DNA from: Macrostomum lignano
Lineage: Eukaryota
Reading direction: 5' to 3'
DNA: 64,000 nucleotides
NCBI GenBank assembly: GCA_002269645.1
Contig: NIVC01002393.1
Span: 114,606-178,605 of the forward strand
The notes under the pieces are model-generated. The model was not told the DNA's origin and searched no databases. It saw nothing but the letters and a program-made list of their open reading frames with translations. Made by a program: the position numbers and the translations under genes. Below are positions 2,880 to 47,347 of the stretch, piece by piece; the first letter of the stretch is position 1, and each line of letters begins with the position of its first letter.

Positions 2880-3710
2880 TTACAGTCTCACCTCTCCATC
2901 TCCACCTTCCCTTTCAGTCTCACCTCTCCATCTCCACCTCCCCTCTCAGTCTCACCTCTCCATCTCCCTTCTCATTCTCACCTCTCCATCTCCCTTCTCA
3001 TTCTCACCTCTCCATCTCCCTTCTCATTCTCACCTCTCCATCTCCCTTCTCATTCTCACCTCTCCATCTCCCTTCTCAGTCTCACCTCTCCATCTCCACC
3101 TCCTCTCTCAGTCTCACTTCTCCATCTCCAACTCCCTCTCAGTCTCACCTCTCCATCTCCAACTCCCTCTCAGTCTCACTTCTCCATCTCCACCCCCTCT
3201 TACTCTCACCTCTCCATCTCCAACTCCCTCTCAGTCTCACCTCTCCATCTCCAACTCCTCTCTCAGTCTCACTTCTCCATCTCCACCCCCCTCTTACTCT
3301 CACCTCTCCATCTCCAACTCCTCTCTCAGTCTCACTTCTCTATCTCCACCCCCTCTTACTCTCACTTCTCCATCTCCACCCCCCTCTTACTCTCACCTCT
3401 CCATCTCCAACTCCCTCTCAGTCTCACTTCTCCATCTCCAACTCCCTCTCAGTCTCACTTCTCCATCTCCAACTCCCTCTCAGTCTCACTTCTCCATCTC
3501 CAACTCCTCTCTCAGTCTCACCTCTCCATCTCCAACTCCCTCTCAGTCTCACCTCTCCATCTCCAACTCCTCTCTCAGTCTCACTTCTCCATCTCCAACT
3601 CCCTCTCAGTCTCACTTCTCCATCTCCAACTCCCTCTCAGTCTCACTTCTCCATCTCCAACTCCCTCTCAGTCTCACCTCTCCACCTCCCTATCAGTCTC
3701 ACCCCTTCAC
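2880..3710. repeat. About 31-33-bp C/T-rich minisatellite
   Basis: Core cagtctcacctctccatctcca; same core as 13990-15200. Confidence 0.93.
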
Positions 3711-5387: not shown

Positions 5388-5484
5388 GCTGGGGTGGCAA
5401 CCGCACGATTGGCCAGAGACTCAGAGAGACTGGGCCGAGAAAGGCCAACACCCCAACATGCGCCAGCTTATAGAAGGGTGTTAA
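5388..5484 (+). promoter_or_regulatory. Conserved upstream module, copy A (putative promoter or 5' end of the methyltransferase unit)
   Basis: gctggggtggcaac..gcacgatt..gactgg.ccgagaaag..ccccaacatg..agctta..ggg..ttaa recurs at 11684-11848 and 15471-15615. Function is inferred from position only. Confidence 0.45.
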
Positions 5485-5784
5485 TACCCTGGAACCAAAA
5501 TATGCTTGGCTGCGTTTCTCTTCGCTCTTCACCGAAGCCTTAAGCTGCAATTCAAGCACTTTAAAGCACTGTCGATCGTTATTGGCAACAGGTAAGTGGA
5601 AGTACGAGTACAATAAATACTCAGGGTTACTATATAGAAAACTGCTGCTGGTCAGATGGGAATTTATAATGCGTGCTCTGTATAAACTATATCTGTATAT
5701 ATTTAGTCTTGAGTAACTGAGTTTTAGGACAGCACTAATAATGCTACGGTCGTATTTAATATTTCCTTTTCAACAGGATACAAG

Positions 5785-6616
5785 ATGGCAGACGGCGGAG
5801 AGCCTGACGTGGAAGCCGTTGCAGAACAGCTGGCTGCCGTGAATATTCAAGACGAGCCCGTCGGAGAGCTTGTATGGGATGAATTTCCAGGTGAAATCAT
5901 AACTATCAATGAAGTCGAGTACCGTCGCATCAGACTGCGTTTAGTTCCACCGCCGCAGCCCAGCACATGCTACGTGTTCCTTGGAGACGGAGAGGGCGAT
6001 TCCAAGTTTAGCAGCGCGTTTGCAGCACTGCGCGGCTCGCCGTCGGGAATATTTTCTACTGAAATTTTGGGTCAAGAAGAACAAGAAAACACAAACGTCT
6101 GGCCCAGGCGACGGCATCTCAAGATAATAAGGGGGCCCCCCAGGTTTGAGGCCCGTGGCCCCCCCCCATCTGGAAGACAGAGAAGCGTTCTTAAATTGGC
6201 TGAATCTCGGTGTGAATCCAGATCACATCGTCCTGTGGTTCCAGTGTCCGTGGGCCTATCAGATGGGATATCCACAGGATGGGCGAGACCAGGAGCATTT
6301 TATAAGGGACATAATGGCAGCCGCGGCGAAGGTTCAAGAACCTGGCGAGCTGCTGCTCATCGGGCTGTGTGTCGTATCACCGTACGTTGAGCGGTACGGC
6401 TCACCGATAACAGCTGCAGAAGATAGCGGCTATTTATACGAGTGTCTCGGTGCCGACAAGGAATTTGTTGGCAAAATGCTGGATCGAAGATATCAGCACC
6501 AATTTAACGCAAATAGCGCAAATACACTGACACGAAACGAGCAATTCGCTACTCTGCTGTTCAAACGCCAAAACCCGCAAACAACACAGGCCCAGCACCT
6601 ACTCAAAGAAAAGTAG
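5785..6616 (+). pseudogene. BMT5/DUF2431-like SAM-dependent methyltransferase, copy A, frameshifted near 6120-6170
   Basis: ORF 5785-6390 (YVFLGDGEGDSKFSSAFAALRG) and ORF 6146-6616 (IVLWFQCPW, RDIMAAAAKVQEPGELLLIGL, RYQHQ) together are collinear with the intact copy at 15924-16769. 5'UTR intron 5592-5776 (gtaagt...caacag). The frameshift sits in G/C homopolymers and could be an assembly error. Confidence 0.7.
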
Positions 6617-6649
6617 AAAAGACAAACTCATGGCTGTTGTTTGATCATT

Positions 6650-8215
6650 AATGTAGCCGCTGTTAATTCCCTTTTTGTTATAGCCGCTGTTAATTCCCTT
6701 TTTGTTATAGCCGCTGTTAATTCCCTTTTTGTTATAGCCGCTGTTAATTCCCTTTTTGTTATAGCCGCTGTTAATTCCCTTTTTGTTATAGCCGCTGTTA
6801 ATTCCCTTTTTGTTATAGCCGCTGTTAATTCCCTTTTTGTTATAGCCGCTGTTAATTCCCTCTTTGTTATAGCCGCTGTTAATTCCCTTTTTGTTATAGC
6901 CGCTGTTAATTCCCTTTTTGTTATAGCCGCTGTTAATTCCCTTTGTTATAGCCGCTGTTTATTCCCTTTTTGTTATAGCCGCTGTTAATTCCCTTTTTGT
7001 TATAGCCGCTGTTAATTCCCTTTTTGTTATAGCCGCTGTTAATTCCCTTTTTGTTATAGGCGCTGTTTATTCCCTTTTTGTTATAGCCGCTGTTAATTCC
7101 CTCTTTGTTATAGCCGCTGTTTATTCCCTTTTTGTTATAGCCGCTGTTTATTCCCTTTTTGTTATAGCCGCTGTTAATTTTCTCTTTGTTATAGCCGCTG
7201 TTAATTCCCTCTTTGTTATAGCCGCTGTTTATTCCCTCTTTGTTATAGCCGCTGTTAATTCCCTCTTTGTTATAGCCGCTGTTAATTCCCTTTTTGTTAT
7301 AGCCGCTGTTAATTCCCTCTTTGTTATAGCCGCTGTTAATTCCCTCTTTGTTATAGCCGCTGTTAATTCCCTTTTTGTTATAGCCGCTGTTAATTCCCTC
7401 TTTGTTATAGCCGCTGTTAATTCCCTTTTTGTTATAGCCGCTGTTTATTCCCTTTTTGTTATAGCCGCTGTTAATTCCCTTTTTGTTATAGCCGCTGTTA
7501 ATTCCCTCTTTGTTATAGCCGCTGTTAATTCCCTTTTTGTTATAGCCGCTGTTAATTCCCTTTTTGTTATAGCCGCTGTTAATTCCCTTTTTGTTATAGC
7601 CGCTGTTAATTCCCTTTTTGTTATAGCCGCTGTTAATTCCCTTTTTGTTATAGCCGCTGTTAATTCCCTTTTTGTTATAGCCGCTGTTAATTCCCTTTTT
7701 GTTATAGCCGCTGTTAATTCCCTCTTTGTTATAGCCGCTGTTAATTCCCTCTTTGTTATAGCCGCTGTTAATTCCCTTTTTGTTATAGCCGCTGTTAATT
7801 CCCTTTTTGTTATAGCCGCTGTTAATTCCCTTTTTGTTATAGCCGCTGTTAATTCTTCTTGTTATAGCCGCTGTTAATTCCCTCTTTGTTATAGCCGCTG
7901 TTAATTCCCCTTGTTATAGCCGCTGTTTATTCCCTTTGTTATAGCCGCTGTTAATTCCCTCTTTGTTATAGCCGCTGTTAATTCCCTTTGTTATAGCCGC
8001 TGTTAATTCCCTTTGTTATAGCCGCTGTTAATTCCCTTTGTTATAGCCGCTGTTAATTCCCTTTGTTATAGCCGCTGTTAATTCCCTTTGTTATAGCCGC
8101 TGTTAATTCCCTTTGTTATAGCCGCTGTTAATTCCCTTTGTTATAGCCGCTGTTAATTCCCTCTTTGTTATAGCCGCTGTTAATTCCCTTTGTTATAGCC
8201 GCTGTTAATTCCCTC
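6650..8215. repeat. 27-bp minisatellite (25-bp variants distally) just 3' of methyltransferase copy A
   Basis: gttatagccgctgttaattcccttttt, more than 55 copies. Confidence 0.97.
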
Positions 8216-9854
8216 TTTATTGGCGCCAATAAATCTAAATCGAAAAGACTTGGTTTTCGTTTCTTGAACAGTAAACTCCACTTACGTCAAAAAGCTCGAA
8301 TAGTGTTCCGCTTTTTTCGGGAATGGGCTTGTCTATGGCCACACGCAAGTATCACTGGACCAATTTCTTAGAATTTTGGATTCAACTCTGATCAAATATT
8401 TAATTCAATCTGCTCAAATTTCAGACAATTCTTCCTTGTCTGGAGTTCTCCTGAATTTCCCATTATATATCCCCGAACTGTTTGATGAATATCCCGCAGA
8501 CACAGGCTGTGACTGCTTCAATTCCCCTGTGACTGAGTGCCAGATGCACCCAGGAAGTTTACTCTTTTTTAACTCATTTTGTTTATCTGCACCCAGGCGT
8601 TACCACATCTGTTTTCTCTGCCCCACCACTCTTTTACTCTCTGCCCTCCCTTAAGCTGCTCAAATTCCAATCTGTACTCAAGCTCTGCTAATTTGCCATC
8701 TGCTGCTGTTGCTAGCTAGTAGTAAATAATTATTTGCCCTAGCACCCACATCAGCAGATCAGAGCCCTTCTTAGCGGACCACATGACATCGCGCTGTTAA
8801 GAATGTGAATGTGCGCTCGAGATGGTGTCGATAGATTGGCTCAGTCCGTCCTCAGTTACAAAATTTATGGCCGAGCTCTCGAACAGAAGCTCGAGAGAGA
8901 TGCTCTCAATGTAGATCCCACACAGTGAATGCTGCTTCTCAAACCCGTTTCTCAAGCGCCCACCCCTGCCCAGCTGAACTGGGGAGCTCTGCCAACTCCC
9001 TATAGGCGCATGCAACGCAAACAAGAACGCCTCAACAATGGACTCGGGCATACACCAGAGCCTCCGATATAGCAGTATACAGGAGCCCATGCTCCTCTGC
9101 AATGCCACAGACAGCCACCAGCAGGATTTTTCAGCCCCCAGCTTGGCTTCGCTGAGAAATTGCCTCCTGACTGGCGTGGCGATCGGCTCTCCGCTCCGCC
9201 CTGCAGGTCCCGGGAGCGTTCAGAGCCCCTCTTTGGAGCACAGCCCGCATAATAATCAATACTGTGCCTGGGACAGACGGAGCTCCCAGCCAAGCATTCG
9301 TTACAGAAATTCCCAAGGCATTGCTTGGGCCACAGCATTCAGTACTGGGCAGTTGCTCAATTAGTCCAAGAAATGCAGTGAGACTCCAATTAAATATGAA
9401 ATTAAAAATACGGCAGAGAAGAGATTTTGTCAATTATGCCACTTAAGCAGTTGTTTTTGCAGATGCAGGAGTTCGCATTCCAGTGCCATAAAAGCAATGG
9501 CACCACTGTGCAACCGGCACCAATGCAGTGAACTCCCAGTCCCATCGCACTGACGGATTGGCGCAGGCCCGGAGGTCCGGGATCGAGTCCGGAGCCTTCA
9601 GCTCTTCACCCCTGGGGGTAGCCGAGCTGCTCCCAGTCACCTGAGCTCAGAGCGCGGCCAGCGATCTCACCAGAAGCACCTGGAGAGGCCAAGTAAAGCC
9701 GCTGCCAGTTGCCAGCCCGAGTGTCACCCCCATCAGGCCATAAAATCGGCATTCCTGGCGCACCTGGGAGCCGGGGGGATTCCCGCATTTACCTACGCAA
9801 GAGATGCACCGGCCGCTGCTGCCCAAGAAATGAAAAACAGTTCCCAAGCCAAAC

Positions 9855-10745
9855 ACCCAGTACTCAGACACCCAGCACTCAGACACCCAGCACTCAGACA
9901 CGCAGCACTCAGACACCCAGCACTCAGACACCCAGCACTCAGACACCCAGCACTCAGACACCCAGCACTCAGACACCCAGCACTCAGACACCCAGCACTC
10001 AGACACCCAGCACTCAGACACCCAGCACTCAGACACCCAGCACTCAGACACCCAGCACCCAGACATCCAGCACTCAGACACCCAGTACTCAGACACCCAG
10101 TACTCAGACACCCAGCACTCAGACACCCAGCACTCAGACACCCAGCACTCAGACACCCAGTACTCAGACACCCAGCACTCAGACACCCAGCACTCAGACA
10201 CCCAGTACTCAGACACCCAGCACTCAGACACCCAGCACTCAGACACCCAGTACTCAGACACCCAGCACTCAGACACCCAGCACTCAGACACCCAGCACTC
10301 AGACACCCAGCACTCAGACACCCAGCACTCAGACACCCAGCACTCAGACACCCAGCACTCAGACACCCAGCACCCAGACATCCAGCACTCAGACACCCAG
10401 TACTCAGACACCCAGCACTCAGACACCCAGCACTCAGACACCCAGCACTCAGACACCCAGCACTCAGACACCCAGCACTCAGACATCCAGCACTCAGACA
10501 CCCAGCACTCAGACACCCAGCACTCAGACACCCAGTACTCAGACACCCAGTACTCAGACACCCAGCACTCAGACACCCAGTACTCAGACACCCAGCACTC
10601 AGACACCCAGCACCCAGACACCCAGCACTCAGACACCCAGTACTCAGACACCCAGTACTCAGACACCCAGCACTCAGACACCCAGTACTCAGACACCCAG
10701 CACTCAGACACCCAGTACTCAGACACCCAGCACTCAGACACCCAA
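9855..10745. repeat. 15-bp minisatellite
   Basis: cagcactcagacacc, about 59 copies. Confidence 0.97.
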
Positions 10746-11683
10746 CCCTCACAGCCATCAGTGGCTCCCATTAGCCAAAGTTTTTGACCCCATCACAGCC
10801 AATCACTATGTCTGCAACGTACATCATGTACTTTAAAAGTGCCAGTTCAAAGTCACGTGGTTCTGCTTGGCTCCAGAGCGAACCCGCAACTCGCACTGCT
10901 CCGACTCTCCTGCAGGCTGCAGCCTGCTTTTGCTCAAAGTCTGCTCGGCTCAATGAACTCCTGTTGCATGCTGGTCTGCGCGCATTTGCCAGTCTCTGTG
11001 CTGATTTTGCATGCCAGTGAATCTGGTAAAACCGTGTGTGATTTCCGGTCAACGAAAATCATTGCTTTTTAAGAAAGAATGGTTTTTGAAGGAGCGGAAG
11101 AAAAGATACTTCGATGGACACTCGCTGTAAATGCGGTTTTGTGAATAGGGGATTGGAAGGCCGATTTTTGTTAGAGGGGCCCGCTGCATGAAAAATAGGG
11201 AAGGATTTTGGTTTGGATCATTTTTAGTTCGGCCGGATATACGCTGCATCAGTTCAGTGGGAGAATATCCGGTCATTTCTTCGGACAAGTGACACCAACT
11301 TTACATATCCGGATGTTTTGTTCGGATATTATAGTTCTGTTGGATTTGTTTGAGTGTCACTTTTCGATTGAGCATTATCCGCGCTGTTCCAATCTGCCAG
11401 TTCTTCAATCGCCTGTCTGGCTGCTGTTTGTGGAACAATCCATGTGCCAAGAACAGAACTTGAGTGTCTGAGGGTAAGGAATAAAACAAGTTCGGATCTC
11501 CAACCTGCAATGCTACTTCGGCGCGCAGAAATGCCACCGCAACTTTTCCTAAAGCTGTGCTTTCACATGTTGAGCACACGATGTAGCAGTAGCAGCAACA
11601 GCTGCAGCAGAGGCAGCAATCGATAGGAGGAGAGGGAGAGGAGGAGAGGGACAGGGGAGTACAGGGGACATCGAACAGGAGAG

Positions 11684-11848
11684 GGAGAGGGGAGTAAAGA
11701 GTCAAGCTGTCACCCCCCCCCCTCAAGCTGGGGTGGCAACACGCACGATTTGCCGGACAGACTGGCTGAGAAAGGGGGGAACTCATGAACGTACAGCTTG
11801 GCCATGGTACGACACACCCCAACATGTGCGAGCTTAGTAGGGTATTAA
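11684..11848 (+). other. Solo copy C of the methyltransferase upstream module, with no gene downstream
   Basis: ggagaggggagtaaagagtcaagctg...gctggggtggcaacacgcacgatttgccggacagactggc...ccccaacatgtgcgagcttagt is closely similar to 15471-15615. Confidence 0.8.
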
Positions 11849-12301
11849 CAGTAGAACTACCAAGAGGGGGGGGGAAATTCCCCCCCCCCTGACAATTTTT
11901 TTTGCTGCGCCGGAACGGAGCAACGCAGGCACACAAAATTCAAGAACACGGGCTAACTTTTTGTTGCGCACCTTCTCAAACAAGAATCAAGTCGCCAACC
12001 CTCCGGACCGTCGAGATATTCGACGATTCTGCCAGAAGGTCGGATTTTTCTCATAAGCGCTAGTGTATTCAGTACACCCCTGTGCGCCAAATAGCACTGC
12101 GCCTCAGTGCAGCTTTGCCAAGTCTCCAAATTTCATCAGCACGTCGACCAAATGTGTCTGCATCAGCTCTGACTTCGTTGGTTACTGGCCTTCACCGAGA
12201 CGGAGCTTCTAGACCTTCAACAGGTGGCACCAGGTGACTATGAACACCTTGATGCGAATTTCTCTAGTTTCACCGATCAAGCCTCGACAGTAGGCAAGCC
12301 T

Positions 12302-12802
12302 CAACTGCCGGACACCCTCAGCTAGTCTCCTAAGCATTTAGCCATCACCCCGACGCCGTCGGCTCCTTCAACAGGTGGCACCAGGGGAGTAATGACACGT
12401 GAGCGTGATTTTTTATCATGCTCTTAACATTTCTGAATCATTAAAAAATGAAAAAACCGATTGAATTTACTGGCTTCTTAAAAGCATAACCCTTTCTGCA
12501 TAAAAATTGGGTTCAATATTATAGTTGAATAAACTAAACAGCTTTTCGAATAAAATATGTATTATGCTCGTATGCATAAAAGTATGTGTAATAGTAATAT
12601 AAATATACAGCAACATGAGTTCAAGCTTAACTATAGCAATGTCCGTGCTTTAAAAATTTTGAGAGCTTCAGAAATGTTAAGAGCATGATGAAAAATCACG
12701 CTCAGGTGTCATTACTCCCCTGGTGCCACCTGTTGAAGGTGCCGACGGCGTCGGGGTGCTGGCTGAATGCTTGACTGACTAGCTGAGAATGTCTGGCGGT
12801 TG
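12302..12802. repeat. Inverted repeat: about 136-bp arms (12302-12437 and 12667-12802) around an AT-rich spacer of about 230 bp
   Basis: The right arm ttcagaaatgttaagagcatgatgaaaaatcacgctcaggtgtcattactcccctggtgccacctgttgaagg... is the reverse complement of the left arm with scattered substitutions. Confidence 0.92.
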
Positions 12803-12839
12803 TGTCTAACAGGCACACACTGTAACACCCTGTGTCTAA

Positions 12840-13120
12840 TTTCGGGCTTTTGAAATTTTGGGTTTGTGAAATTTTGGGTTTGTGAAATTTTGGGTTTGTG
12901 AAATTTTGGGTTTGTGAAATTTTGGGTTTGTGAAATTTTGGGTTTGTGAAATTTTGGGTTTGTGAAATTTTGGGTTTGTGAAATTTTGGGTTTGTGAAAT
13001 TTTGGGTTTGTGAAATTTTGGGTTTGTGAAATTTTGGGTTTGTGAAATTTTGGGTTTGTGAAATTTTGGGTTTGTGAAATTTTGGGTTTGTGAAATTTTG
13101 GGTTTGTGAAATTTTGGTTT
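12840..13120. repeat. 16-bp minisatellite
   Basis: aattttgggtttgtga, about 17 copies. Confidence 0.97.
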
Positions 13121-13989
13121 CTAATCTTTCCAGCTCATAAAAGACAGTGTCCTTCGACATCGAGAAAATTCGCTGTTCTTTGGAAACTTCCACGCCTCCC
13201 GCTCCCCCTGGCCAGCCTATCCATTGCTTTTGGGTGGGGCAGAGGTTCCGCTTTCCAATGTGCGTTTCGGACACGCTTCTCCTGCCAATGAGCAGTTGCA
13301 AGTTTTGCCACAGATCAATAAGTATTTCTAATAAGTTACTGGTGTGCGGGTAGGGGCCAACTCTGCTGTGCGTTTCTGTGCTGTGCCTTGACGTCTGGCT
13401 TTTCTCTCCCAGCCTTCCCTCCAACCAGCATTCGCCCTTCTGTAGCAGCTCTGCCTGAAATTTCTGCCCCTCTGTCTCTTCCTTTTATCTCAAGTACCGC
13501 GTTTGCTTGCTGCAGAACCGCCCGTCTGCTTTTGCGAGTTCCGCCTTCTCTGTGGCCTGCGAGTCTCTGCCTGCCGCTTCATCAGCTAACTGGCGAGTTC
13601 AAAATCATAACTGGTGATTGGTGAGTCTTGATCTGCCCTGCTTCAGTCTGCTGGGTTGGCATTGGAGTGAGCTGTCAATTAGGCTTGCGATTGCTCACTA
13701 ACCAAATGTTTTAAGCTGAATTTGCAGGCTACCCTTTGCTTTTTTCTAACTCCCTCCTTCTCTCCACTTGCAAGGAATCAAGGAAGCAAGGAAAAATAAA
13801 TAAAATACAACAGGGAAAATGTGCTGGGCCCCTGGTGCTGGCGCCCCTGCCCAGTGTCAAAATTCGAGTCCCTACCTACCTTCTCCCTTTCTCCCCTCCT
13901 TCTCCCTCCCTCCCTCTTTCTCCCTTCCTCCCTCTTTCTCCCTTCCTCCCTCCTTCTCCCTCCCTCTTCTCTTCTCCCTCACCTACTTC

Positions 13990-15200
13990 TCCCTCAGTCT
14001 CACCTCTTTATCTCCACTTCCCTCTCAGTCTCACCTCTTTATCTCGACCTGCCTCTCAGTCTCACCTCTCCATCTGCACCTCCTCTCTCAGTCTCACCTC
14101 TCCATCTGCACCTCCTCTCTCAGTCTCACCTCTCCATCTGCACCTCCTCTCTCAGTCTCACCTCTCCATCTGCACCTCCTCTCTCAGTCTCACCTCTCCA
14201 TCTGCACCTCCTCTCTCAGTCTCACCTCTCCATCTGCACCTCCTCTCTCAGTCTCACCTCTCCATCTGCACCTCCTCTCTCAGTCTCACCTCTCCATCTC
14301 CACCTGCCTCTCAGTCTCACCTCTCCATCTGCACCTCCTCTCTCAGTCTCACCTCTCCATCTGCACCTCCTCTCTCAGTCTCACCTCTCCATCTGCACCT
14401 CCTCTCTCAGTCTCACCTCTCCATCTGCACCTCCTCTCTCAGTCTCACCTCTCCATCTGCACCTCCTCTCTCAGTCTCACCTCTCCATCTGCACCTCCTC
14501 TCTCAGTCTCACCTCTCCATCTGCACCTCCTCTCTCAGTCTCACCTCTCCATCTCCACCTGCCTCTCAGTCTCACCTCTCCATCTCCCTCTCAGTCTCAC
14601 CTCTCCATCTCCACTTCCCTCTCAGTCTCACCTCTCCATCTCCACTTCCCTCTCAGTCTCACCTCTCCATCTCCACCTGCCTCTCAGTCTCACCTCTCCA
14701 TCTCCACCTCCCTCTCGGTCTCACCTCTCCATCTCCACCTGCCTCTCAGTCTCACCTCTCCATCTCCACCTCCCTCTCGGTCTCACCTCTCCATCTCCAC
14801 TTCCCTCTCAGTCTCACCTCTCCATCTCCACCTCCCTCTCAGTCTCACCTCTCCATCTCCACCTGCCTCTCAGTCTCACCTCTCCATCTCCACCTCCCTC
14901 TCGGTCTCACCTCTCCATCTCCACCTGCCTCTCAGTCTCACCTCTCCATCTCCACCTCCCTCTCGGTCTCACCTCTCCATCTCCACCTGCCTCTCAGTCT
15001 CACCTCTCCATCTCCACCTCCCTCTCGGTCTCACCTCTCCATCTCCACCTGCCTCTCAGTCTCACCTCTCCATCTCTACCTCCCTCTCGGTCTCACCTCT
15101 CCATCTCCACCTGCCTCTCAGTCTCACCTCTCCATCTCCACCTGCCTCTCGGTCTCACCTCTTTATCTCCACTTCCCTCTCAGTCTCACCTCTCCAGATC
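13990..15200. repeat. 31-32-bp C/T-rich minisatellite, same family as 2880-3710
   Basis: cagtctcacctctccatctgcacctcctctct and variants. Confidence 0.95.
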
Positions 15201-15470
15201 TACCTACCATTCGTAAATAATTCGTAAACAGCTGACATGGTATAAGGAGTACTAAAATTCTTGATTAGCAATTTAGAGTATCGAGAGCAAGCAATAAGTC
15301 AAAGGAAATGTACATAATTTGTAAAGGCTTGCCCATGGCTTTTCCGTGGTGAGTCCCTCAAAAAGCTTGACTAATCGAGAACGTACATATGTACGCTCGT
15401 GTTTTTTTAATGTGTCCTTTTTAGAGATGGAAAGGAGAGTTTGCGCTGTGTTTCAGCCTGCAACAGGGAA

Positions 15471-15615
15471 GGAGAGGGGAGTAAAGAGTCAAGCTGCCAG
15501 CCCCCCCCCCCCCCTCAATGGCTGGGGTGGCAACACGCACCCGCACGATTTGCCGGACAGACTGGCCGAGAAAGGGCCACATACCCCAACATGTGCGAGC
15601 TTAGTGGGATATTAA
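15471..15615 (+). promoter_or_regulatory. Conserved upstream module, copy B
   Basis: Homologous to 5388-5484 and 11684-11848; followed by 5'UTR intron 15738-15915 and the methyltransferase ATG. Confidence 0.45.
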
Positions 15616-15923
15616 TTGCCTGGAACCAAACGGATTTCTCATCTCTCTCCATCGAAGCCTTAAGCTAAAACCGTTCTTGTGACATTTAAGCGTTTTGTAA
15701 GTCCTATTCAAGCACTGTCGATCATTCTTGGCAACAGGTAAATGGAAGTGCACTAAATACTCAGGGTTACAAAATAGAAAACTGCTGCTGGTCTGATGGG
15801 AATTTATAATGCGAGCTGTGTGCATAAACTATATGTGTATAGATTAGTTTTGAGTAATTGAGCTTGACGTGTAGGAAAGCATTAACAATGTTATCTATCA
15901 ATTCCCTTTTCACAGGATACAAG

Positions 15924-16769
15924 ATGACACACTACGGAGGGCCTGCCGTGGCTGCCATTGAAGAACAGATGGCTGCCGTGAATATTCATGGCGAGCCGGT
16001 CGGAGAGCTTGGATGGGATGAATTGCCAGATGAAAAAGATATACCTATCAATGAAGACAATTACTCTCGCATCAGACTGCGTTTAGATAAACCGCCGCAG
16101 CCCAGCACATGCTACGTGTTCCTTGGAGACGGAAAGGAAAATTGCACGTTTAGCGGGGCGTTTGCACAACTGCGTCGCTCGTCGCGGGGAATCTTTTCTA
16201 CTGACATTTCGGTTGAGATAGAAGAAGAAGAAGAAGAAGAACAAGTAGAACAAGTAGAACAAGTAGAACAAGAAGAACAAGAAGAACAAGAACAAGACGA
16301 CTGGCCCAAACGACTGCGTATTGACGCTACAAAGATGGGAGAAAACAGAGGTGAATTTTTACTGAAGCTTTACCCCAATCAGGAGAAGCCATCTCGCATC
16401 GTCCTGTGGTTCCAGTGTCCTTGGACAGCCTATGGTCAGGACAATCAGGAACTATTCCTAAGGGACATAATGGCAGCTGCGGCAAAAGTTCAAAACCCTG
16501 GCGAGCTGCTGCTCATCGGGCTGTGTGTGGATACGTTCCTGTTTCATTTAGCATCGTACGTTAAGCGGTACGGCTCGCCGAAAGCAGCTGCAGAAGCTAA
16601 CGGCTACAAGTGCATGGGAGCCGACCAGGAATTTGTTGGTGAAATGCGGAGCAGAGGGTACGAGCACCGCGCCTCTACAGACAGGAAGTTGGGTCTGGAA
16701 AGAAACGACCAATTCGCCACGCTGTTGTTCCAACGGAAAAAGCCTGACCCGCACCCAACACAGGGCTAA
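15924..16769 (+). CDS. BMT5/DUF2431-like SAM-dependent methyltransferase, copy B, 281 aa, single coding exon
   Basis: Motif order matches DUF2431 as I recall it: YVFLGDGKENCTFS (cf. LLVGEGNFSFS), IFST, RIDATKM (cf. VDATKL), IVLWFQCPW (cf. IIFNFPH), NQELFLRDIMAAAAKVQNPGELLLIGL (cf. N..LL..FF..A...L...GEIHVTL), RGYEHR (cf. PGY.HR). ATG follows the acceptor cacag|gatacaag as in copy A. Needs HMM confirmation. Confidence 0.75.
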   Translation: MTHYGGPAVAAIEEQMAAVNIHGEPVGELGWDELPDEKDIPINEDNYSRIRLRLDKPPQPSTCYVFLGDGKENCTFSGAFAQLRRSSRGIFSTDISVEIEEEEEEEQVEQVEQVEQEEQEEQEQDDWPKRLRIDATKMGENRGEFLLKLYPNQEKPSRIVLWFQCPWTAYGQDNQELFLRDIMAAAAKVQNPGELLLIGLCVDTFLFHLASYVKRYGSPKAAAEANGYKCMGADQEFVGEMRSRGYEHRASTDRKLGLERNDQFATLLFQRKKPDPHPTQG

Positions 16770-16829
16770 CACCTGCTCGAGGAATAATTTAGAACAACAA
16801 ACTCACTACGAATTTTGTTTTTAACAATT

Positions 16830-17140
16830 GCTGATTCAGCCCTTTAATGTATTCACTGCTGATTCAGCCCTTTAATGTATTCACTGCTGATTCAGCCCTT
16901 AAATGTATTCACTGCTGATTCAGCCCTTAAATGTCTTCACTGCTGATTCAGCCCTTTAATGTATTCACTGCTGATTCAGCCCTTAAATGTATTCACTGCT
17001 GATTCAGCCCTTAAATGTATTCACTGCTGATTCAGCCCTTAAATGTATTCACTGCTGATTCAGCCCTTAAATGTATTCACTGCTGATTCAGCCCTTAAAT
17101 GTATTCACTGCTGATTCAGCCTTTTAATCTACTCACTGCA
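16830..17140. repeat. 28-bp minisatellite just 3' of methyltransferase copy B
   Basis: tgctgattcagcccttaaatgtattcac, about 10 copies. Confidence 0.95.
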
Positions 17141-30500: not shown

Positions 30501-33500
30501 TCTGTCTTTCTTTTGGTTTTTCTGTCTGTCTGTCTGTCTTAGTGTTTGTCTGTCTTTCCGTTCGTCTGTCTGTCTGTCTTTCTTTCGGTTTTTCTGTCTG
30601 TCTGTCTGTCTTAGTGTTTGTCTGTCTTAGTGTCTGTCTGTCTTAGTGTTTGTCTGTCTTTCCGTTCGTCTGTCTGGCTGTCTGTCTGTCTTTCATTCCG
30701 TTTGTCTGTCTGTCTGTCTTAGTCCCACTAAAAACGGGTTATCGGATTGACATCGGAATCTGGCCGGATTTTAGCAGGGCAATCGGAATCTGGTGGAACT
30801 AGATTTGCAAGCAAAAAAACGATGAAAAATGTGCTCCAATGACATCCAAAAACTACACAAAGTATTTCCTGGCTTTCTTTGCTTCTCGGAAGCACCCCGG
30901 AAACATACCGGAATATGAGGCTCCATATTCCGACCGGAATTTACACTGCACCCGAGCCGTCACTTTCCGACAATAATTTTGAACGCAAGCTTCGCAAAAA
31001 TATCAGCATACTTATCAACTAGTATGATGACTGTCCACTTTGAAGAAAAAACTCTTTTAGACGGGAATTCTGCGCCCTCGCAATTTGCAAGAAGAACAGC
31101 TAGCAAGCTTTGTTTTACGCGATCAAGTGTTGAAGCTATTGACCAGTTTAATTTGCACACTTCCATTTTCACTAATTTGCGCTCGCTTGGAACATCAGCT
31201 CTTTTGAACACAGCTCCTTTAGCCAACACAGGACAGTGAGACCACAACTTTGAACTCTCTGCAACTTCATCTGTGGTTACACGCAAATACTATACTAGTA
31301 TGCTACTCCTTTCGTTCATTTAGTGCATTTCTTTAGTCTCCTATTATCTTGTATGCTTGAATTTTTTACTGGCGGACTATATAATCGCTAATTTCAGTAA
31401 TAAAATATATTATTATTGTTTATTTGTGATAACAGCTAGCCAAAACTATTATACTATACCTAAAAAGAACAATTTGGTATACTGCAATACTGCATAGTGA
31501 GTTTTGACCATAGTGGCACTTGCAGAAGCTTATTAATATTTGAGTACAGTATATGATAGGCACCAATTGTCCAGCTATACATAATATATACTGACATTGT
31601 ACTATACTCAGCCAGTTTCAATTCAGACCATCGCAAAGTAGTAAACAAGGGCCAATTCTATAAATTCTATCTAGTGCTAGTCCTAGATTTCTCATATTGA
31701 AAGAGACTGCAAATTAAAATAATTGACTACATTGTGTACTAAAAACATATAAGGCAAAAGCTAGTTCTAATAATAAATAAGTATTGTCATTTATTGATTA
31801 ATTTGATTTAATGGCTTTGCCAAGTCGTGCATCAAATAGACAGGTAGCCAGGGAAATGCAAGAAATACTACAAGAGCTTCCGACGATTGGGGCTACAAAT
31901 ATTGAGGCTAGGCTAGATCTAGAAAATGTGATGGGACAAAATGAAGATACAAAGAGCAATGCTGAGCCTGAAGAGACATTCTTTGATGCAGTGGGTCCAA
32001 TGCCAATGGACTTTGATAGCCAAATGCATGCTCTTTTTGAGGAAGAAATGGATGAAGAAGTTGAAGAACAAGATGACTCTCTTGGCTATAATAGACCTCC
32101 GCCACTTACTTTGGTGCAAGAGTTACTATTGTTTTACATAACATTCAATATTACTAGTGCTGCCATGAATTACCTACTTCGGCTTTTGGCTCGTTTCTTC
32201 ACTGACATACCCACTTCTGTCTACATGCTTAAGAGGCAGTGTCCAAGCACAGAGATCACGAGGTTCAATGTCAATAATGGTCATGTTGCCTTTCTCTCCA
32301 TTGTGGACAATTTGAAATTTTTACTTGATTCCAAAATCCTTACAATTCCATCTGGAATTACAAACTTCTTTGTTTCCTTAAGGGTAAATGTTGATGGTCT
32401 TCCTTTATTCAAGTCATCTAGAATCAATCTTTGGCCTATATTGATGCTAGTAAATAATTGTTTTAGACCTGTGCCATTTGGCCTTTTTTGTGGCATTGGA
32501 AAGCCTGACCTACATGTCTTCTTAGAAAGGTTTTGTTCTGAAATTGCAGGTCTACAGAATGGTTTTGACTATAATATGAAAAGAATTTTTATTAAGTCAA
32601 TTGTCTTTATCTGTGACACACCTGCTAGAAACTTTATTCAATGTTTGAAAGGTCATTCCAGTTATCTTGGCTGTAGTTGGTGTCGTCAAGTAGGAAATTA
32701 CACAGGTGACAGAATTTGTTTTTCTAATACCATTGCAGAGGCTCGAACAAATCAAGATTATGAACAAGGGCGTGAAAATAACCAACTTGGTATTTCTCCA
32801 CTAGCCAGGATTGTTCCAATGTATTCCAATTTTGTACCCGACCCAATGCATATTGTCTACTTAGGGGTTGTAAAGAAGTTGCTCAAATTTTACTTCCTTG
32901 GAGCAAAGCACATTCGACTTGCTTGCAAGTTGTCATCCCAATTAAAAGAGGAAATAAATAGAAAAATAATGTATATTAAGGAATTTGTTCCTTCAGATTT
33001 TCAAAGACGGCTTCGCACTTTTGCTGACATTGAATACTTTAAAGCAACGGAATTCCGCCAATGTCTTTTGTACTTTGGTCCGTTCCTTTTTAAGAATACC
33101 TTGCCAAAGGTCTACTTTAATCATTATCTATTATTGCATTGGTCAATTTCAGTCCTTAATTCACCTGAGTACTGTGAAATTTATTTTGATGCTGCTGAGG
33201 CTTGTTTGAAAAAGTTTGTTGCTGAGGCACCAAGCCTATATTACAACAGTGTAGTTTCTTATAATTGGCATGCTCTGTTGCACCTTCCTGAGTTTGTGCA
33301 AATGTATGGCCCACTTGACACGTTTTCAGCTTTCCCTTTTGAAAACTACTTGCAATTGATCAAGAAGAGAATTCGTTGTACCAATCATGTTTTTGCCCAA
33401 TCTGTCAACCAGTTGTTGAATGTGAGATTTTTATATTCTAATGACAAGTTGGGTGACATTGGTTTTACTAATAAGAGTCCTAATAACTGTGCTATTGTTG

Positions 33501-45481: not shown

Positions 45482-47347
45482 TCAAGAATTCGCCAAATAG
45501 TTACCCTGTTTCGGCTGCAATTTCAGTCGCGGCGGTAGTCGCCCCATCAAAGCCTCAGTCCAAGTCGATCCGTTGACCAAATCAACAAGAACGCCGAATA
45601 CAATATTCACTGGCAATGGTAGTTTACGCAAAGACGCGGATGTTATGGTAGAGGACGTCACGTGACTATCAATCGGAAGTCGAACGGCTTTGCAGCCAAA
45701 CTGAGCAGCCTCGATAACAGACGCGCCCGGTTGTCTAGCTTCATCAACAAAGCCGCCAATGACGTAGACAGCGGATGGAGAAAGCTCATATAGACACTGC
45801 TCAGCATCCGGTGACAGGTAAATAATCTCCTTATTAGGAAAGCTATCAACTGGCGATTGAGGAAATAATGCAATACGATAGGCTTGCATGGAATATTTCT
45901 GCCTAGCAACAGTTGCTAAGCGAGACTCTAATTGATAATTGGTTAAACAGAGTTGAACCATATTAGGCTGAGAAGATCGGTGAATACCATAGAGTCTATT
46001 TAATTGTTTAGCCAATTTGTCCACCTCTTTATCGGACATTTTCGATTCATAGGTCAAGTCTAAGCAGATTGTCGGCTGGCCTTGGCTAAGAGCCAATTCT
46101 AATCGGGCGTCTAGCAGAGCTTTTGCATCGCGCTTGGTCACGTGATCGAGGCCGGACTCCACTGCGGCGGTAAAGGTAGGGGGTTTTAAAATTACTACAT
46201 GTACTTTAAAAAAACATTAAACCAAATGCAATAAAAAACTAAAATAACTTCTCAGCCCCCAAAGTCTAATTTATTATCTTTTACTATCTGGGGAATCCCA
46301 CCATTAACCACTTGGGGAATCCCACCATTAACCACTTGGGAATCCCACCATTAACCACCTGGGGAATCCCAGATTAACCACCTGGGGAATCCCACCATTA
46401 ACCACCTGGGGAATCCCAGATTAACCACCTGGGAATTCCACCATTAACCACCTGGGGAATCCCACCATTAACCACCCGGGGAATCCGCGATTAACTGCTT
46501 GGGGGAATCCCTTACTAACTACTGAGGGACTCCTCCATTAACTACCTAAAGAATCACCCATAAACCATCTGGGCGATCCCTTATTAACTAACTGGGAATC
46601 CCCACTAACTACCTGGGGAATCCCCCATTTAACCACCTGGGGAATCCCCCATTAACTACCTGGGGAATTCCCCATAAACTACCTGGGGATAGTGGGTAGG
46701 CTTTGTATTTATGTTTCTTTGTTAGTTATAGTTGTAGCTAGGTCTCATTTTCGTGTATCAAAGATACCAGGTATTTACGTCTCCGGACCCCGCCCCCATT
46801 ATCGCTTAGTGTACATGCAATCTCAGCCCCACCCAAATTTTTTGTGTCATTTAGCAGTTAAATATAAAAGGATCGACGGCTTGAATTTGTTCGTGAGAGC
46901 GCGTTGTGGCAATAGTCAAAACCTGCCGAGAGTTTGAGCAAAAGTTATTTGTCTTGAGAACAGGGGAATCTTCCCATTAACCACCTGGGGAATCGCTCCA
47001 TAAACCACCTGGGGAATCCCCTATTAACTACCTGGGGAATCTTACAATTAAACACCTGTGGAATCCCTCTATTAACAACTTGAGAAATCGCTTCATTTTT
47101 CTCTTGGGGTATCACCGCTTCAGAAAACTCAGATTAGCCTAAACAAACCAAATAAATTTGAACCATATCTTACTTCAGCTACTTAAAGTAGAAATGCAAA
47201 AATATATCCAAAACAAGTGAAAATGACAAAACCTTTTAATCGAACGGCTGCCCTGTGACGCTCACGTCGTCGCTCCTTCTCTTTGCGTCGCTTGTCCACT
47301 CGCCAGTCGGTGGACTTCAAGCTGTCACTGTCTTCGGCTTGGTGCAT
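45482..47347 (-). CDS. TRMT10B: tRNA m1G9 methyltransferase, TRM10 family (TRMT10B-like), 2 exons (47347-47233, 46161-45482), 264 aa
   Basis: Exon 1 MHQAEDS...KEKERRRERHRAAVRLK joins in phase 1 to ICLDLTYESKMSDKEV.KLAKQL, IIYLSPDA, YVIGGFVD, VRLPI, LPVNIVF, W.EAL...LPPR (SPOUT Trm10 motifs). Family is secure; the A/B paralog call is less so. Confidence 0.85.
46290..47080. repeat. About 21-bp minisatellite in the TRMT10 intron, two blocks (46290-46690, 46960-47080)
   Basis: ccattaaccacctggggaatc. Confidence 0.9.

What the first reader, a model, noticed from the sequence alone, without database searches (positions are those of the whole stretch)
5388..17140. Duplicated divergent BMT5/DUF2431-like methyltransferases with a WFQCPW motif
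Two single-coding-exon paralogs 10 kb apart share an upstream module, a 5'UTR intron, the gatacaagATG start and the 3' flank. The motif order fits DUF2431 (yeast Bmt5 25S rRNA m3U methyltransferase; N-terminal domain of FDXACB1), but with FQCPW for FNFPH and a GDGxx insertion in motif I. They are clearly diverged from each other and sit among repeats without recognisable conserved neighbours. Inference: a lineage-expanded, possibly mobile or horizontally acquired methyltransferase family of unknown substrate.
Basis: partly seen in the sequence, partly recalled or inferred. Interest (0 to 1): 0.7.

Follow-up and report, generated by a model that had tools for sequence, protein, structure and literature searches.

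The report
Flatworm tandem BMT5-like methyltransferase paralogues
Two neighbouring genes in the flatworm Macrostomum lignano belong to a large, unstudied eukaryotic branch of the Bmt5-type RNA methyltransferase family that carries a changed active-site motif (WFQCPW) and evolves fast by local duplication; there is no sign that they are mobile or foreign.

Summary
Two head-to-tail gene units lie 10.1 kb apart. They share an upstream non-coding exon, a 178-185 nt 5'UTR intron, the gatacaagATG start and a short 3' flank. Related minisatellites bracket each unit. The window is Macrostomum lignano nuclear DNA (contig NIVC01002393.1).

Copy 2 is an intact 281-aa ORF. Copy 1, as assembled, is frame-broken by a 37-nt G/C-rich segment. 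It has also lost the DAT motif.

The DUF2431/BMT5 reading is right at superfamily level. A 51%-identical paralogue passes Pfam PF10354, and 22 of 28 clade members hit it. Profile-profile probability against canonical BMT5-like domains is 97.8%, with FQCPW aligned to FNFPx. AlphaFold (pLDDT 80) gives a class I SAM-methyltransferase fold.

WFQCPW is not a local oddity. It marks a eukaryote-wide clade of 352 cluster representatives, including Mycena fungi and many unnamed eukaryotes, and no paper mentions it.

I found no evidence that the genes are mobile or horizontally acquired. They have spliceosomal introns and no transposon features. No viral or prokaryotic relatives turned up. The assembly holds three collinear versions of the locus beside a conserved HECTD1-like gene.

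The picture is birth-and-death evolution in a minisatellite hotspot. Substrate is unknown; an RNA base is the best guess.

The parts
2883..3709 (+). 31-bp minisatellite upstream of copy 1, homologous to the array upstream of copy 2
   Evidence: TRF; blastn about 85% identity to 13874-15212; also present in the paralogous loci L001/L005 and L008
5388..5591 (+). Copy 1 shared upstream module: putative promoter plus non-coding exon 1, ending at ...ggcaacag
   Evidence: 75% identical to 15521-15737; exon 1 is inferred from the conserved donor, with no transcript evidence for this copy
5592..5776 (+). Copy 1 5'UTR intron (GT...AG, 185 nt)
   Evidence: 86% identical to the copy 2 intron, which is more than the CDS; donor and acceptor are conserved in all five M. 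lignano units read
5785..6143 (+). Copy 1 coding part A: ATG, motif I GDGEGDSKFS, and KII in place of DAT
   Evidence: Translation; 81% identical to P0084 of contig NIVC01000261.1
6144..6180 (+). 37-nt G/C-rich segment that breaks the frame of copy 1 (GT...AG ends; C9 run at 6159-6167). It could be a homopolymer miscount, a mini-intron or a real frameshift.
   Evidence: The same segment is 35 nt (C7 run) in L008. Both loci become in-frame either by splicing it out or with a C8 run. It holds the only indel between the two genes that is not a multiple of 3, up to 2 codons before the stop.
6181..6616 (+). Copy 1 coding part B: WFQCPW at 6236-6253, GELLLIGLC, GADKEFVG, FATLLF, stop TAG 6614-6616
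   Evidence: The ORF is maintained against L008: P(no stop) 0.04-0.05, and all three indels in this part before the stop region are multiples of 3.
6654..8218 (+). 27-bp minisatellite (59 copies) starting 38 nt after the copy 1 stop
   Evidence: TRF; the unit is related to the 28-bp unit after copy 2; the same array follows the L008 gene
13496..13613 (+). Distal alternative 5' exon, joined to the copy 2 acceptor in public gene model A0A1I8GZW2 (donor actg|gtgatt)
   Evidence: tblastn of P0002 residues 1-40, 100% identity; sequence
13874..15212 (+). 31-bp minisatellite upstream of copy 2
15521..15737 (+). Copy 2 shared upstream module: putative promoter plus non-coding exon 1
   Evidence: 93.5% identical to the module upstream of P0003 on NIVC01001764.1
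15738..15915 (+). Copy 2 5'UTR intron (GT...AG, 178 nt)
   Evidence: the acceptor is used by gene model P0002
15924..16769 (+). Copy 2 CDS, 281 aa, intact. Motif I FLGDGKENCTFS 16116-16154; acidic low-complexity insert about 16212-16301; DAT 16323-16331; WFQCPW 16407-16424; stop TAA 16767-16769.
   Evidence: 123 bits / E 6e-39 against a family HMM built without Macrostomum sequences. AF2 model pLDDT 79.9 with a class I methyltransferase fold.
16829..17139 (+). 28-bp minisatellite (11 copies) starting 60 nt after the copy 2 stop
   Evidence: TRF

Best explanation
The two features are tandem, head-to-tail paralogues in the nuclear genome of Macrostomum lignano. They belong to an undescribed, eukaryote-wide clade of the BMT5-like (Pfam PF10354, formerly DUF2431) class I SAM-dependent methyltransferases.

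The clade hallmark is motif IV (V/I/L)WFQCPW in place of the canonical FNFP(H/Y). It comes with GEGNFTFS (motif I), DAT, GD-x-x-IGI, GAD...GY(K/R)H and H(V/I)TLVF.

Each gene is a small unit: a non-coding exon 1, a ~180-nt 5'UTR intron, and one coding exon. Minisatellites lie on both sides.

Shown: the family in M. lignano has diversified by local duplication, deletion and gene conversion in this minisatellite-rich hotspot. The recent genome duplication of the species then multiplied the locus. The three collinear versions in the assembly carry different gene complements. Protein evolution is fast (dN/dS 0.5-0.9).

Inferred mechanism: the protein binds SAM through the glycine-rich loop after strand 1, the acidic residue after strand 2 (TD) and the DAT aspartate after strand 3. 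It then transfers the methyl group to a flipped-out nucleobase held by the aromatic Q-C-P-W loop after strand 4. The most likely target is a ring nitrogen of an RNA base, as in Bmt5 (m3U) and in the structurally closest Kam/NpmA enzymes (m1A).

Copy 2 looks functional, although its SAM loop carries a 2-aa insertion. Copy 1 is degenerate in all three SAM motifs and frame-broken as assembled. It is either a pseudoenzyme or decaying gene, or it is intact if the C-run is miscounted or the 37-nt segment is spliced out.

The confidence of 0.8 applies to the identity claim: tandem paralogues of a WFQCPW clade of BMT5-like class I methyltransferases, evolving by birth and death, not mobile. That copy 2 is an active RNA-base methyltransferase I put at about 0.4.
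For: Organism and copies.

Family membership:
- P0003 scores 30.5 bits against PF10354 (cut-off 24.7).
- 22 of 28 clade members hit PF10354, best E 5.9e-14.
- hhalign against canonical plant BMT5-like domains gives 97.8% probability, E 1.2e-12, with motif-for-motif alignment.

Fold: AF2 pLDDT 79.9, pTM 0.82, seven-strand alpha/beta topology. 614 Foldseek PDB hits at E<=1e-3; all 50 listed are class I SAM-methyltransferase-fold proteins. Best TM scores are the KamB/NpmB1/Kmr-type rRNA m1A1408 enzymes.

Genuine members: all M. lignano paralogues score 109-123 bits against a family HMM built without Macrostomum sequences.

Birth-and-death evolution: collinear loci with different gene content and 88-99% identical flanks. 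Mosaic identity: module 93.5% versus CDS 70% for copy 2 against P0003. dN/dS 0.5-0.9.

Tandem clusters of the family also occur in unrelated eukaryotic contigs.

Coding constraint across the copy 1 break.

Background: M. lignano is a hidden polyploid with 15% tandem repeats (PMC10468722; PMC5730564). Bmt5 is the yeast 25S m3U2634 enzyme (PMC3950682). The Trp in the loop after strand 4 of KamB/NpmA is essential for positioning the target base (PMC2995053).
Against: - The window proteins themselves do not reach any Pfam threshold.
- Motif I of both copies carries an insertion in the SAM loop. This could abolish cofactor binding.
- dN/dS near 0.5-0.9 is also what relaxed constraint would give.
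- No biochemical data exist for any WFQCPW-clade protein, and no paper mentions the motif.
- The canonical N and H of FNFPH are replaced, so substrate and chemistry may differ from Bmt5.
- Transcription is supported only indirectly, by one public gene model for copy 2.
- TM scores to solved structures are modest (0.4-0.55).
Confidence: 0.8

Rival explanations
1. The pair is the ordinary Bmt5/FDXACB1 orthologue of the flatworm, with a local duplicate, doing the housekeeping m3U methylation of large-subunit rRNA.
For: The superfamily is the same. UniRef already labels paralogue P0003 a '25S rRNA (uridine-N(3))-methyltransferase' BMT5-like protein.
Against: - Motif IV is FQCPW, not FNFPH.
- There is no FDX-ACB or other extra domain.
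- M. lignano has at least 7 diverged copies at 51-80% identity with dN/dS 0.5-0.9. That is unlike a housekeeping rRNA enzyme.
- In flies and humans the 28S m3U is made by a SPOUT enzyme, not by a Bmt5 homologue (title and abstract of PMC11641110).
Confidence: 0.05
2. The genes are cargo of a mobile element, or were recently acquired horizontally from bacteria, viruses or fungi.
For: - The taxonomic distribution is patchy, with large expansions in Mycena fungi.
- Reverse-transcriptase ORFs lie near family members on two unrelated contigs.
- The coding sequence is a single exon.
Against: - Every unit has a conserved spliceosomal 5'UTR intron, and paralogue P0005 has a 0.7-1.4 kb intron inside WFQ|GPW.
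- There are no inverted terminal repeats and no transposase in the units.
- Pattern-plus-tblastn scans found no relatives in IMG/VR or in 185,579 prokaryotic species genomes.
- Macrostomum sequences cluster together in a neighbour-joining tree.
- Three collinear loci sit next to the same HECTD1-like gene.
Confidence: 0.05
3. Both window copies are non-catalytic: copy 1 is a pseudogene, and copy 2 is a pseudoenzyme or a decaying duplicate. The cluster would then be neutral debris of a duplication-prone minisatellite region.
For: - Copy 1 is frame-broken and lacks DAT, and its motif I and strand-2 acidic residue are altered.
- A sister copy on L005 has a frameshift in an A-run and has lost its stop codon.
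- Copy 2 has a 2-aa insertion in the SAM loop and a 30-aa acidic low-complexity insert.
- dN/dS is 0.5-0.9.
Against: - Between copy 1 and its L008 counterpart, every indel in the coding parts up to 2 codons before the stop is a multiple of 3. The 144-codon part after the break has stayed open (P about 0.04-0.05 for substitutions alone).
- Hallmark motifs (WFQCPW, GELLLIGLC, GAD..FVG, FATLLF) are intact in all copies.
- The motif I insertion is shared with a 377-aa protein from another sequencing project (P0009), so it is old and tolerated.
- The assembly is PacBio CLR polished only with Pilon, so homopolymer frameshifts may be errors.
Confidence: 0.3
4. The WFQCPW clade has changed chemistry or substrate relative to Bmt5. 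For example, it may methylate a pyrimidine C5 through the conserved motif IV cysteine, or act on DNA, protein or a small molecule.
For: - Q164, C165, P166 and W167 are invariant or nearly invariant across 80 diverse members, whereas canonical enzymes have N-F-P-H/Y.
- The top Foldseek hits by E-value include small-molecule C-methyltransferases.
- From general knowledge, not tested here: a Pro/Cys pair after strand 4 is where DNA m5C methyltransferases carry their nucleophile.
Against: - The cysteine is replaced in some members (WFQGPW in P0005, WFQSPW in P0004, WFQMPW).
- No second catalytic acid typical of C5 enzymes was identified.
- The best structural matches by TM score are ring-nitrogen rRNA methyltransferases.
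Confidence: 0.12

Closest known systems
Bmt5 (YIL096C) of Saccharomyces cerevisiae and the Pfam PF10354 BMT5-like / DUF2431 domain (also the N-terminal domain of FDXACB1 and the multi-domain plant proteins)
   Same: It has the same superfamily and fold, and the same order of motifs: GxGxF(S/T)F(S/T), A-T-s, D-A-T, hydrophobic-F-x-x-P-aromatic after strand 4, and a C-terminal G-Y. Profile-profile probability is 97.8%. Clade members hit PF10354 directly.
   Different: Motif IV is WFQCPW rather than FNFPH/Y. There is a variable 20-60 aa insert between strands 2 and 3 and a conserved C-terminal GAD...GY(K/R)H...H(V/I)TLVF block. There is no FDX-ACB domain. The genes are multi-copy, tandemly clustered and fast evolving, rather than single-copy housekeeping genes. 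The window copies add a 2-aa insertion in motif I. No activity is known.
Kam/NpmA family of 16S rRNA m1A1408 methyltransferases (KamB 3mq2, 5bw4/5d1n, NpmB1 7ehf, Kmr 4rx1)
   Same: These are the best structural matches by TM score (TMt 0.50-0.55, Foldseek probability 1.0). They are compact class I enzymes that methylate a ring nitrogen of a flipped-out rRNA base. An essential Trp in the loop after strand 4 positions that base (PMC2995053), and the W of C-P-W sits in the same place in the model (inference).
   Different: There is no detectable sequence similarity. They are bacterial resistance enzymes, and the surface elements used for 30S recognition differ. The resemblance is one of fold and logic, not of membership.
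WFQCPW-type proteins of Mycena and other Agaricomycetes (e.g. Mycena crocata C8R43DRAFT_906081, Rickenella mellea BD410DRAFT_855550)
   Same: They belong to the same clade and carry WFQCPW, DAT and GY(K/R)H. They are also expanded to many copies per genome, and all are annotated only as hypothetical proteins.
   Different: Their motif I is GES-x-x-RSLP instead of GEGNFTFS. Many are fused to other domains (PF21240) or are much longer. They form a separate branch in the neighbour-joining tree.

Membership tests
Pfam PF10354 BMT5-like (DUF2431) superfamily | The protein itself scores above the Pfam gathering threshold (24.7 bits) | tested here: not met
   Copy 2 and both halves of copy 1 give no PF10354 hit even at E<=10. 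The cause is the insertions in motif I and between strands 2 and 3. Paralogue P0003 (51% identical) scores 30.5 bits.
Pfam PF10354 BMT5-like (DUF2431) superfamily | Homology to canonical members detectable at profile level | tested here: met
   22 of 28 clade members hit PF10354, best E 5.9e-14. hhalign of the 80-sequence clade profile against canonical plant BMT5-like domains gives probability 97.8%, E 1.2e-12, over 162 columns. Copy 2 scores 123 bits against a clade HMM built without Macrostomum sequences.
Pfam PF10354 BMT5-like (DUF2431) superfamily | Motif I G-E-G-(N/D)-F-(S/T)-F-(S/T) after strand 1 | tested here: inconclusive
   The motif is present but interrupted: copy 2 has G-D-G-K-E-N-C-T-F-S and copy 1 has G-D-G-E-G-D-S-K-F-S. 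The L008 counterpart reads G-D-G-E-G-N-F-T-F-S, which shows a 2-aa (GD) insertion into an otherwise canonical motif. The effect on SAM binding was not tested.
Pfam PF10354 BMT5-like (DUF2431) superfamily | D-A-T motif after strand 3 | tested here: met
   Copy 2 has R-I-D-A-T-K-M-G, aligned to V-D-A-T of canonical domains. Copy 1 does not meet this feature: it has H-L-K-I-I-R-G.
Pfam PF10354 BMT5-like (DUF2431) superfamily | Motif IV F-N-F-P-(H/Y) after strand 4 | tested here: not met
   Both copies have W-F-Q-C-P-W in the aligned columns. The substitution is shared by the whole clade.
Pfam PF10354 BMT5-like (DUF2431) superfamily | Class I (Rossmann-like, seven-stranded) SAM-methyltransferase fold | tested here: met
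   The AF2 model has pLDDT 79.9 and pTM 0.82, with strand order consistent with class I. Foldseek PDB gives 614 hits at E<=1e-3, and all 50 listed are class I SAM-methyltransferase-fold proteins. The first shallow model gave the same answer.
Pfam PF10354 BMT5-like (DUF2431) superfamily | SAM binding and N3-uridine methylation of large-subunit rRNA (the activity shown for yeast Bmt5, PMC3950682) | not testable with these tools
   This needs biochemistry.
FDXACB1 orthologue | C-terminal ferredoxin-fold anticodon-binding (FDX-ACB) domain after the BMT5-like domain; single-copy gene | tested here: not met
   No further Pfam domain is found and the protein ends just after the methyltransferase core. 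At least 7 copies lie on 5 M. lignano contigs.
Kam/NpmA 16S rRNA m1A1408 methyltransferases | Sequence membership in the family | tested here: not met
   There is no PDB sequence hit with the single protein or with the profile. Only the fold is similar.
Transposable element cargo or horizontally acquired gene | Element termini or a transposase around the unit; closest relatives in viruses or prokaryotes; no host-type introns | tested here: not met
   There are no inverted repeats. No relatives were found in IMG/VR or in GTDB genomes, although those scans rely on hallmark patterns. Spliceosomal introns are present, and the paralogous loci are collinear.

The most novel reading that the evidence does not exclude
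The WFQCPW proteins form a functionally new methyltransferase class derived from the Bmt5 fold. The invariant Q-C-P-W loop would give them a different target or chemistry from N3-uridine methylation. Fast evolution, tandem birth-and-death and patchy lineage-specific expansions (Macrostomum, Mycena, several unnamed animals and protists) would reflect a role in a genetic conflict, for example marking or disabling foreign or selfish nucleic acids, rather than ribosome biogenesis.
Probability: 0.12. Interest if true: 0.75.

Novelty: new variant of a known kind. Interest (0 to 1): 0.4.

Why it matters
Bmt5-type enzymes are known from a single characterised activity, yeast 25S m3U2634. This work shows that a sizeable eukaryotic branch of the family has replaced the catalytic FNFPH motif by an equally invariant WFQCPW. 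The branch comprises 352 clusters at 50% identity. It behaves like a fast-evolving, tandemly expanding gene family, not like a housekeeping rRNA enzyme.

No member has been studied, and the motif appears in no searchable paper. The clade is therefore a defined, testable candidate for a new RNA (or other) methylation activity. M. lignano allows RNAi and transgenesis, so it is a practical system for such tests.

The locus also illustrates how minisatellite-rich regions of this polyploid genome reshuffle genes between subgenome copies. It shows, too, how homopolymer errors or tiny introns can make live genes look dead in the Mlig_3_7 assembly.

Tried and rejected
- **Direct Pfam and PDB sequence searches with the window proteins.** These gave no relevant hit. 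Paralogues and profiles were needed.
- **Organism names for the largest sub-clades.** Thirty proteins were looked up by cluster. Almost all come from unnamed ENA/Logan/JGI assemblies. Only Cuscuta (canonical BMT5), Rickenella and an EukProt transcriptome carried names. The third homologue search was swamped by Mycena sequences. The taxonomic range outside fungi and Macrostomum is therefore only roughly known; one contig also carries an EML-like gene.
- **The copy 1 frame break.** I looked up the exact proteins expected from splicing the 35/37-nt segment and from a C8 run, for both loci. None is in the 15-billion-protein collection. The only contig carrying the copy 1 C-terminal ORF is the window's own. 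The question is unresolved.
- **dN/dS as a test of pseudogene status.** It was not discriminating, because intact pairs show the same range.
- **Transposon hypothesis.** There are no terminal inverted repeats and no Rfam families in 1-22000.
- **Viral or prokaryotic origin.** Nothing was found. Two attempts failed for technical reasons because the alignment was too diverse.
- **Literature.** Searches for the motif, the gene ids and DUF2431 returned nothing on this clade.
- **A 33-nt GT..AG alternative inside the copy 1 segment.** I rejected it because it does not restore the frame.

Full report
**1. What is in the sequence**

[quoted passage not shown] The 281-aa product of 15924-16769 finds itself, a 100%-identical UniRef fragment from M. 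lignano, and a 51%-identical M. lignano protein, BOX15_Mlig027600g1. The C-terminal ORF of copy 1 is on record only on contig NIVC01002393.1 of assembly GCA_002269645.1.

The region is packed with minisatellites of 15-31 bp units. This fits the published description of the genome, in which simple and tandem repeats account for 15% (PMC5730564).

- blastn aligns 5388-6087 with 15521-16232 (75%, E 1e-150) and 6214-6630 with 16385-16805 (70%).
- Each unit has an upstream module that ends in ...ttggcaacag|gtaa(g/a)tgg, then an intron of 185 nt (5592-5776) or 178 nt (15738-15915), then the acceptor ...acag|gatacaagATG.
- The acceptor of copy 2 is used by an independent public gene model, P0002 (UniRef A0A1I8GZW2). 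Its first 40 residues map to a distal exon at 13496-13613 (donor actg|gtgatt), and it continues in frame into 15916.
- The duplication is wider than reported. A 31-bp array precedes both units (2883-3709; 13874-15212), and related 27/28-bp arrays begin right after both stop codons.

One thing was missed. Copy 1 is not a single open frame as assembled. Frame 1 starts at the ATG (5785), and frame 2 ends at TAG 6614-6616. A 37-nt G/C-rich segment, 6144-6180, separates them.

**2. Family assignment**

The window proteins give no Pfam hit and no PDB sequence hit. Their relatives settle the question.
- P0003 scores 30.5 bits on PF10354 BMT5-like, against a cut-off of 24.7.
- P0006 scores 31.9 bits.
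- 22 of 28 diverse relatives hit PF10354, best E 5.9e-14.
- A profile of 80 relatives aligns to canonical BMT5-like domains cut from a Cuscuta protein with hhalign probability 97.8%, E 1.2e-12, over 162 columns.

The alignment pairs the motifs as follows:

| WFQCPW clade | Canonical BMT5-like domain |
|---|---|
| GEGNFTFS | GEGDFSFS |
| IDAT | VDAT |
| IWFQCPW | IVFNFP(F/Y/L) |

AlphaFold2 with the 80-sequence alignment gives pLDDT 79.9 and pTM 0.82, with a seven-strand alpha/beta core. Foldseek against the PDB returns 614 hits at E<=1e-3, and all 50 listed are class I SAM-methyltransferase-fold proteins. The best TM scores belong to the Kam/NpmA-type 16S rRNA m1A1408 enzymes: 3mq2 at 0.55, 5bw4 and 7ehf at 0.51. 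A shallow five-sequence model gave the same answer.

**3. WFQCPW marks a large unstudied clade**

An exhaustive HMMER search of 1.84 billion cluster representatives, using a five-sequence profile, found 352 proteins at E<=1e-3 and 190 at E<=1e-10.
- Nearly all of the top 150 carry (V/I/L)WFQCPW together with GEGNFTFS, DAT, GY(K/R)H and H(V/I)TLVF.
- Across 80 members, G68, P166, Y216, G245 and Y246 are invariant. E69, D134, F163, Q164, C165, W167, D234 and H248 are nearly so.

Named members are mostly Mycena species, with many copies per genome, plus Rickenella. One comes from a EukProt transcriptome. Most are from unnamed ENA, Logan or JGI assemblies. One such contig also carries an EML-like gene. 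In those contigs the family again sits in tandem pairs.

No searchable paper contains the motif, and the four papers that mention DUF2431 do so only once each, in passing.

**4. Not mobile, not foreign**

- The units have no terminal inverted repeats.
- There are no Rfam elements in 1-22000.
- Every unit has a conserved spliceosomal 5'UTR intron.
- The more distant paralogue P0005 has a 0.7-1.4 kb intron inside WFQ|GPW.
- Hallmark-pattern scans confirmed by tblastn found no relatives in IMG/VR or in one genome from each of 185,579 prokaryotic species.
- Macrostomum sequences group together in a neighbour-joining tree, apart from the fungal branch.

The locus also has conserved neighbours:
- a HECTD1-like E3 ligase gene (HECT, Sad1/UNC and ankyrin domains) on the minus strand, 21589-43751;
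- a TRM10-like tRNA m1G methyltransferase, 45482-46162;
- a MYND-finger gene.

**5. How the cluster evolves**

The Mlig_3_7 assembly holds three collinear versions of this locus.

| Contig | Locus id | Gene content |
|---|---|---|
| NIVC01002393.1 | window | copy 1 and copy 2 |
| NIVC01001764.1 | L001/L005 | P0003, plus a second copy with a frameshift in an A-run and a lost stop codon |
| NIVC01000261.1 | L008 | a copy-2-type promoter without its coding region, then a copy-1-like gene, then the HECT gene |

The flanks are 88-99% identical between versions.

This matches the published picture of M. lignano as a hidden polyploid with a recent whole-genome duplication and redundant assembly blocks (PMC10468722; PMC5730564).

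Identity along the units is mosaic.

| Pair | Upstream module | 5'UTR intron | CDS |
|---|---|---|---|
| copy 2 vs P0003 unit | 93.5% | 70% | 70% |
| copy 1 vs copy 2 | 75% | 86% | 73% |

I take this mosaic to reflect gene conversion or unequal exchange between copies. The shared minisatellites are obvious substrates for it (inference).

Pairwise dN/dS among the four genes is 0.5-0.9, with dS 0.18-0.60. The proteins therefore change fast, yet all of them still score 109-123 bits against a clade HMM built without Macrostomum sequences.

**6. Status of copy 1**

The 37-nt segment has a C9 run. Its counterpart in L008 is 35 nt with a C7 run. Two simple readings restore the frame in both loci.
- (a) The true run is C8 in both. 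This gives 276- and 293-aa proteins.
- (b) The segment is removed as a phase-2 GT...AG mini-intron. This gives 264- and 281-aa proteins.

The assembly was made from PacBio CLR reads with Canu and polished only with Pilon. Homopolymer miscounts in multi-copy regions are therefore plausible.

There is evidence that the coding sequence on both sides of the break has been under constraint since the two loci split.
- The four indels in the coding parts up to 2 codons before the stop are multiples of 3 (12, 24, 6 and 3 nt).
- The one indel that is not a multiple of 3, before the stop region, is 2 nt long and lies inside the segment.
- The 144-codon part after the break is open in both loci. In a simulation of the 74 observed substitutions placed at random, only 4-5% of runs produced no stop codon.

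None of the four predicted proteins is in the public protein collection, so the choice stays open.

Whichever reading is right, copy 1 has KII for DAT, E for the strand-2 D, and a degenerate motif I (GDGEGDSKFS). Even if translated, it may not bind SAM (inference).

**7. Likely mechanism**

Shown: the fold, the homology, the motif equivalence and the pattern of conservation.

Inferred: SAM is held by the glycine-rich loop after strand 1, by T-D after strand 2 and by the DAT aspartate after strand 3.

The Q-C-P-W loop after strand 4 occupies the place of the (D/N)-P-P-(Y/F/W)-type motif IV, which contacts the target atom in amino- and ring-nitrogen methyltransferases (general knowledge of class I methyltransferases). 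In KamB/NpmA, the closest solved folds, a Trp in the loop after strand 4 is essential and positions the flipped adenine (PMC2995053). W167 may do the same.

The only characterised relative is yeast Bmt5, which methylates N3 of U2634 in 25S rRNA and loses activity when a conserved glycine in its SAM-binding motif is mutated (PMC3950682). An RNA base is therefore the most likely substrate. However, the invariant change N-F-P-H to Q-C-P-W, the multi-copy state and the fast evolution argue against the housekeeping Bmt5 function. A changed substrate or chemistry cannot be excluded.

**8. Verdict**

I found nothing to support mobility or horizontal origin.

The pair consists of new members of an undescribed variant clade of a known methyltransferase family. 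Interest is moderate. There is no surprise at the level of the fold. The clade is clearly delimited, widespread and unstudied, has an altered catalytic motif, and occurs in an organism where it can be tested.

Noticed in passing
window 6144-6180; L008 10372-10406: A G/C-rich segment with GT...AG ends and a C-run interrupts the copy 1 lineage. It is 37 nt with C9 in the window and 35 nt with C7 in L008. Either a C8 run or splicing as a tiny phase-2 intron restores the frame in both loci. It holds the only coding-region indel between the two loci that is not a multiple of 3, up to 2 codons before the stop.
   Followed up: partly
window 21589-43751, minus strand: A large multi-exon HECTD1-like E3 ubiquitin ligase gene (TRIP12-type N-terminal repeats, ankyrin repeats, Sad1/UNC, HECT). 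Its introns are filled with minisatellites. The same gene follows the methyltransferase cluster on contig NIVC01000261.1 at 90-99% identity.
   Followed up: partly
window 31811-33721, plus strand: An intact 636-aa ORF with no Pfam hit lies in an AT-rich (35% GC) stretch, apparently inside an intron of the HECT gene and on the opposite strand. Its cysteine/histidine-rich middle part looks transposase-like, but this was not tested further.
   Followed up: no
window 45482-46162 and 48616-50538, minus strand: A TRM10-like tRNA (guanine-1) methyltransferase ORF (PF01746, E 6e-18) and a MYND-finger gene. The 366-aa ORF upstream of the MYND exon has no Pfam hit and resembles ZMYND10 from memory only.
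   Followed up: partly
window 6654-8218 and 16829-17139; L008 about 10890-11700; L005 about 16800-17000: Every paralogue is followed within 40-60 nt of its stop codon by its own minisatellite. The 27- and 28-bp units after copies 1 and 2 are related to each other but homogenised within each array. In L005 the second copy has lost its stop and reads into the array (QGQFVSWGPPQTYG repeats).
   Followed up: partly
L005 8735-10006 versus window 14633-15929; L008 1718-2854 versus window 14744-15865: The copy-2-type promoter and exon 1 module is 86-94% identical between subgenome copies. The coding sequence behind it differs: it is P0003 (58% aa identity) on L005 and is missing altogether on L008. 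This marks a sharp recombination or conversion boundary near the exon 1/intron junction.
   Followed up: partly
L006 10001-12194 and L007 10001-11567: The more distant M. lignano paralogue P0005 (WFQGPW, two near-identical loci) is split by a 0.7-1.4 kb intron exactly inside the hallmark motif (WFQ|GPW).
   Followed up: no
P0002 (UniRef A0A1I8GZW2); window 13496-13613: The public gene model for copy 2 is labelled 'MYOF' although it has no similarity to myoferlin in the part seen. It is an N- and C-terminally truncated read-through of the 5'UTR, so the name looks like an annotation artefact.
   Followed up: no
P0009/P0152 (Logan transcript contigs, 377/383 aa): This relative, probably from another Macrostomum-like sample, has a 3-aa insertion in motif I (GDGDDESIAFS) and a tandem duplication of the DAT motif (RIQLDATRIQLDATQMG). 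It also has a 120-aa C-terminal extension with no match. The motif I insertion is therefore older than the window pair.
   Followed up: no
L009 10001-10741 and 18582-19304; L010 10001-11959 and 15560-17170: In unnamed long-read ENA assemblies the WFQCPW genes also occur as tandem pairs. Some are internally duplicated two- or three-domain proteins (P0010, 652 aa), and reverse-transcriptase ORFs lie nearby.
   Followed up: no
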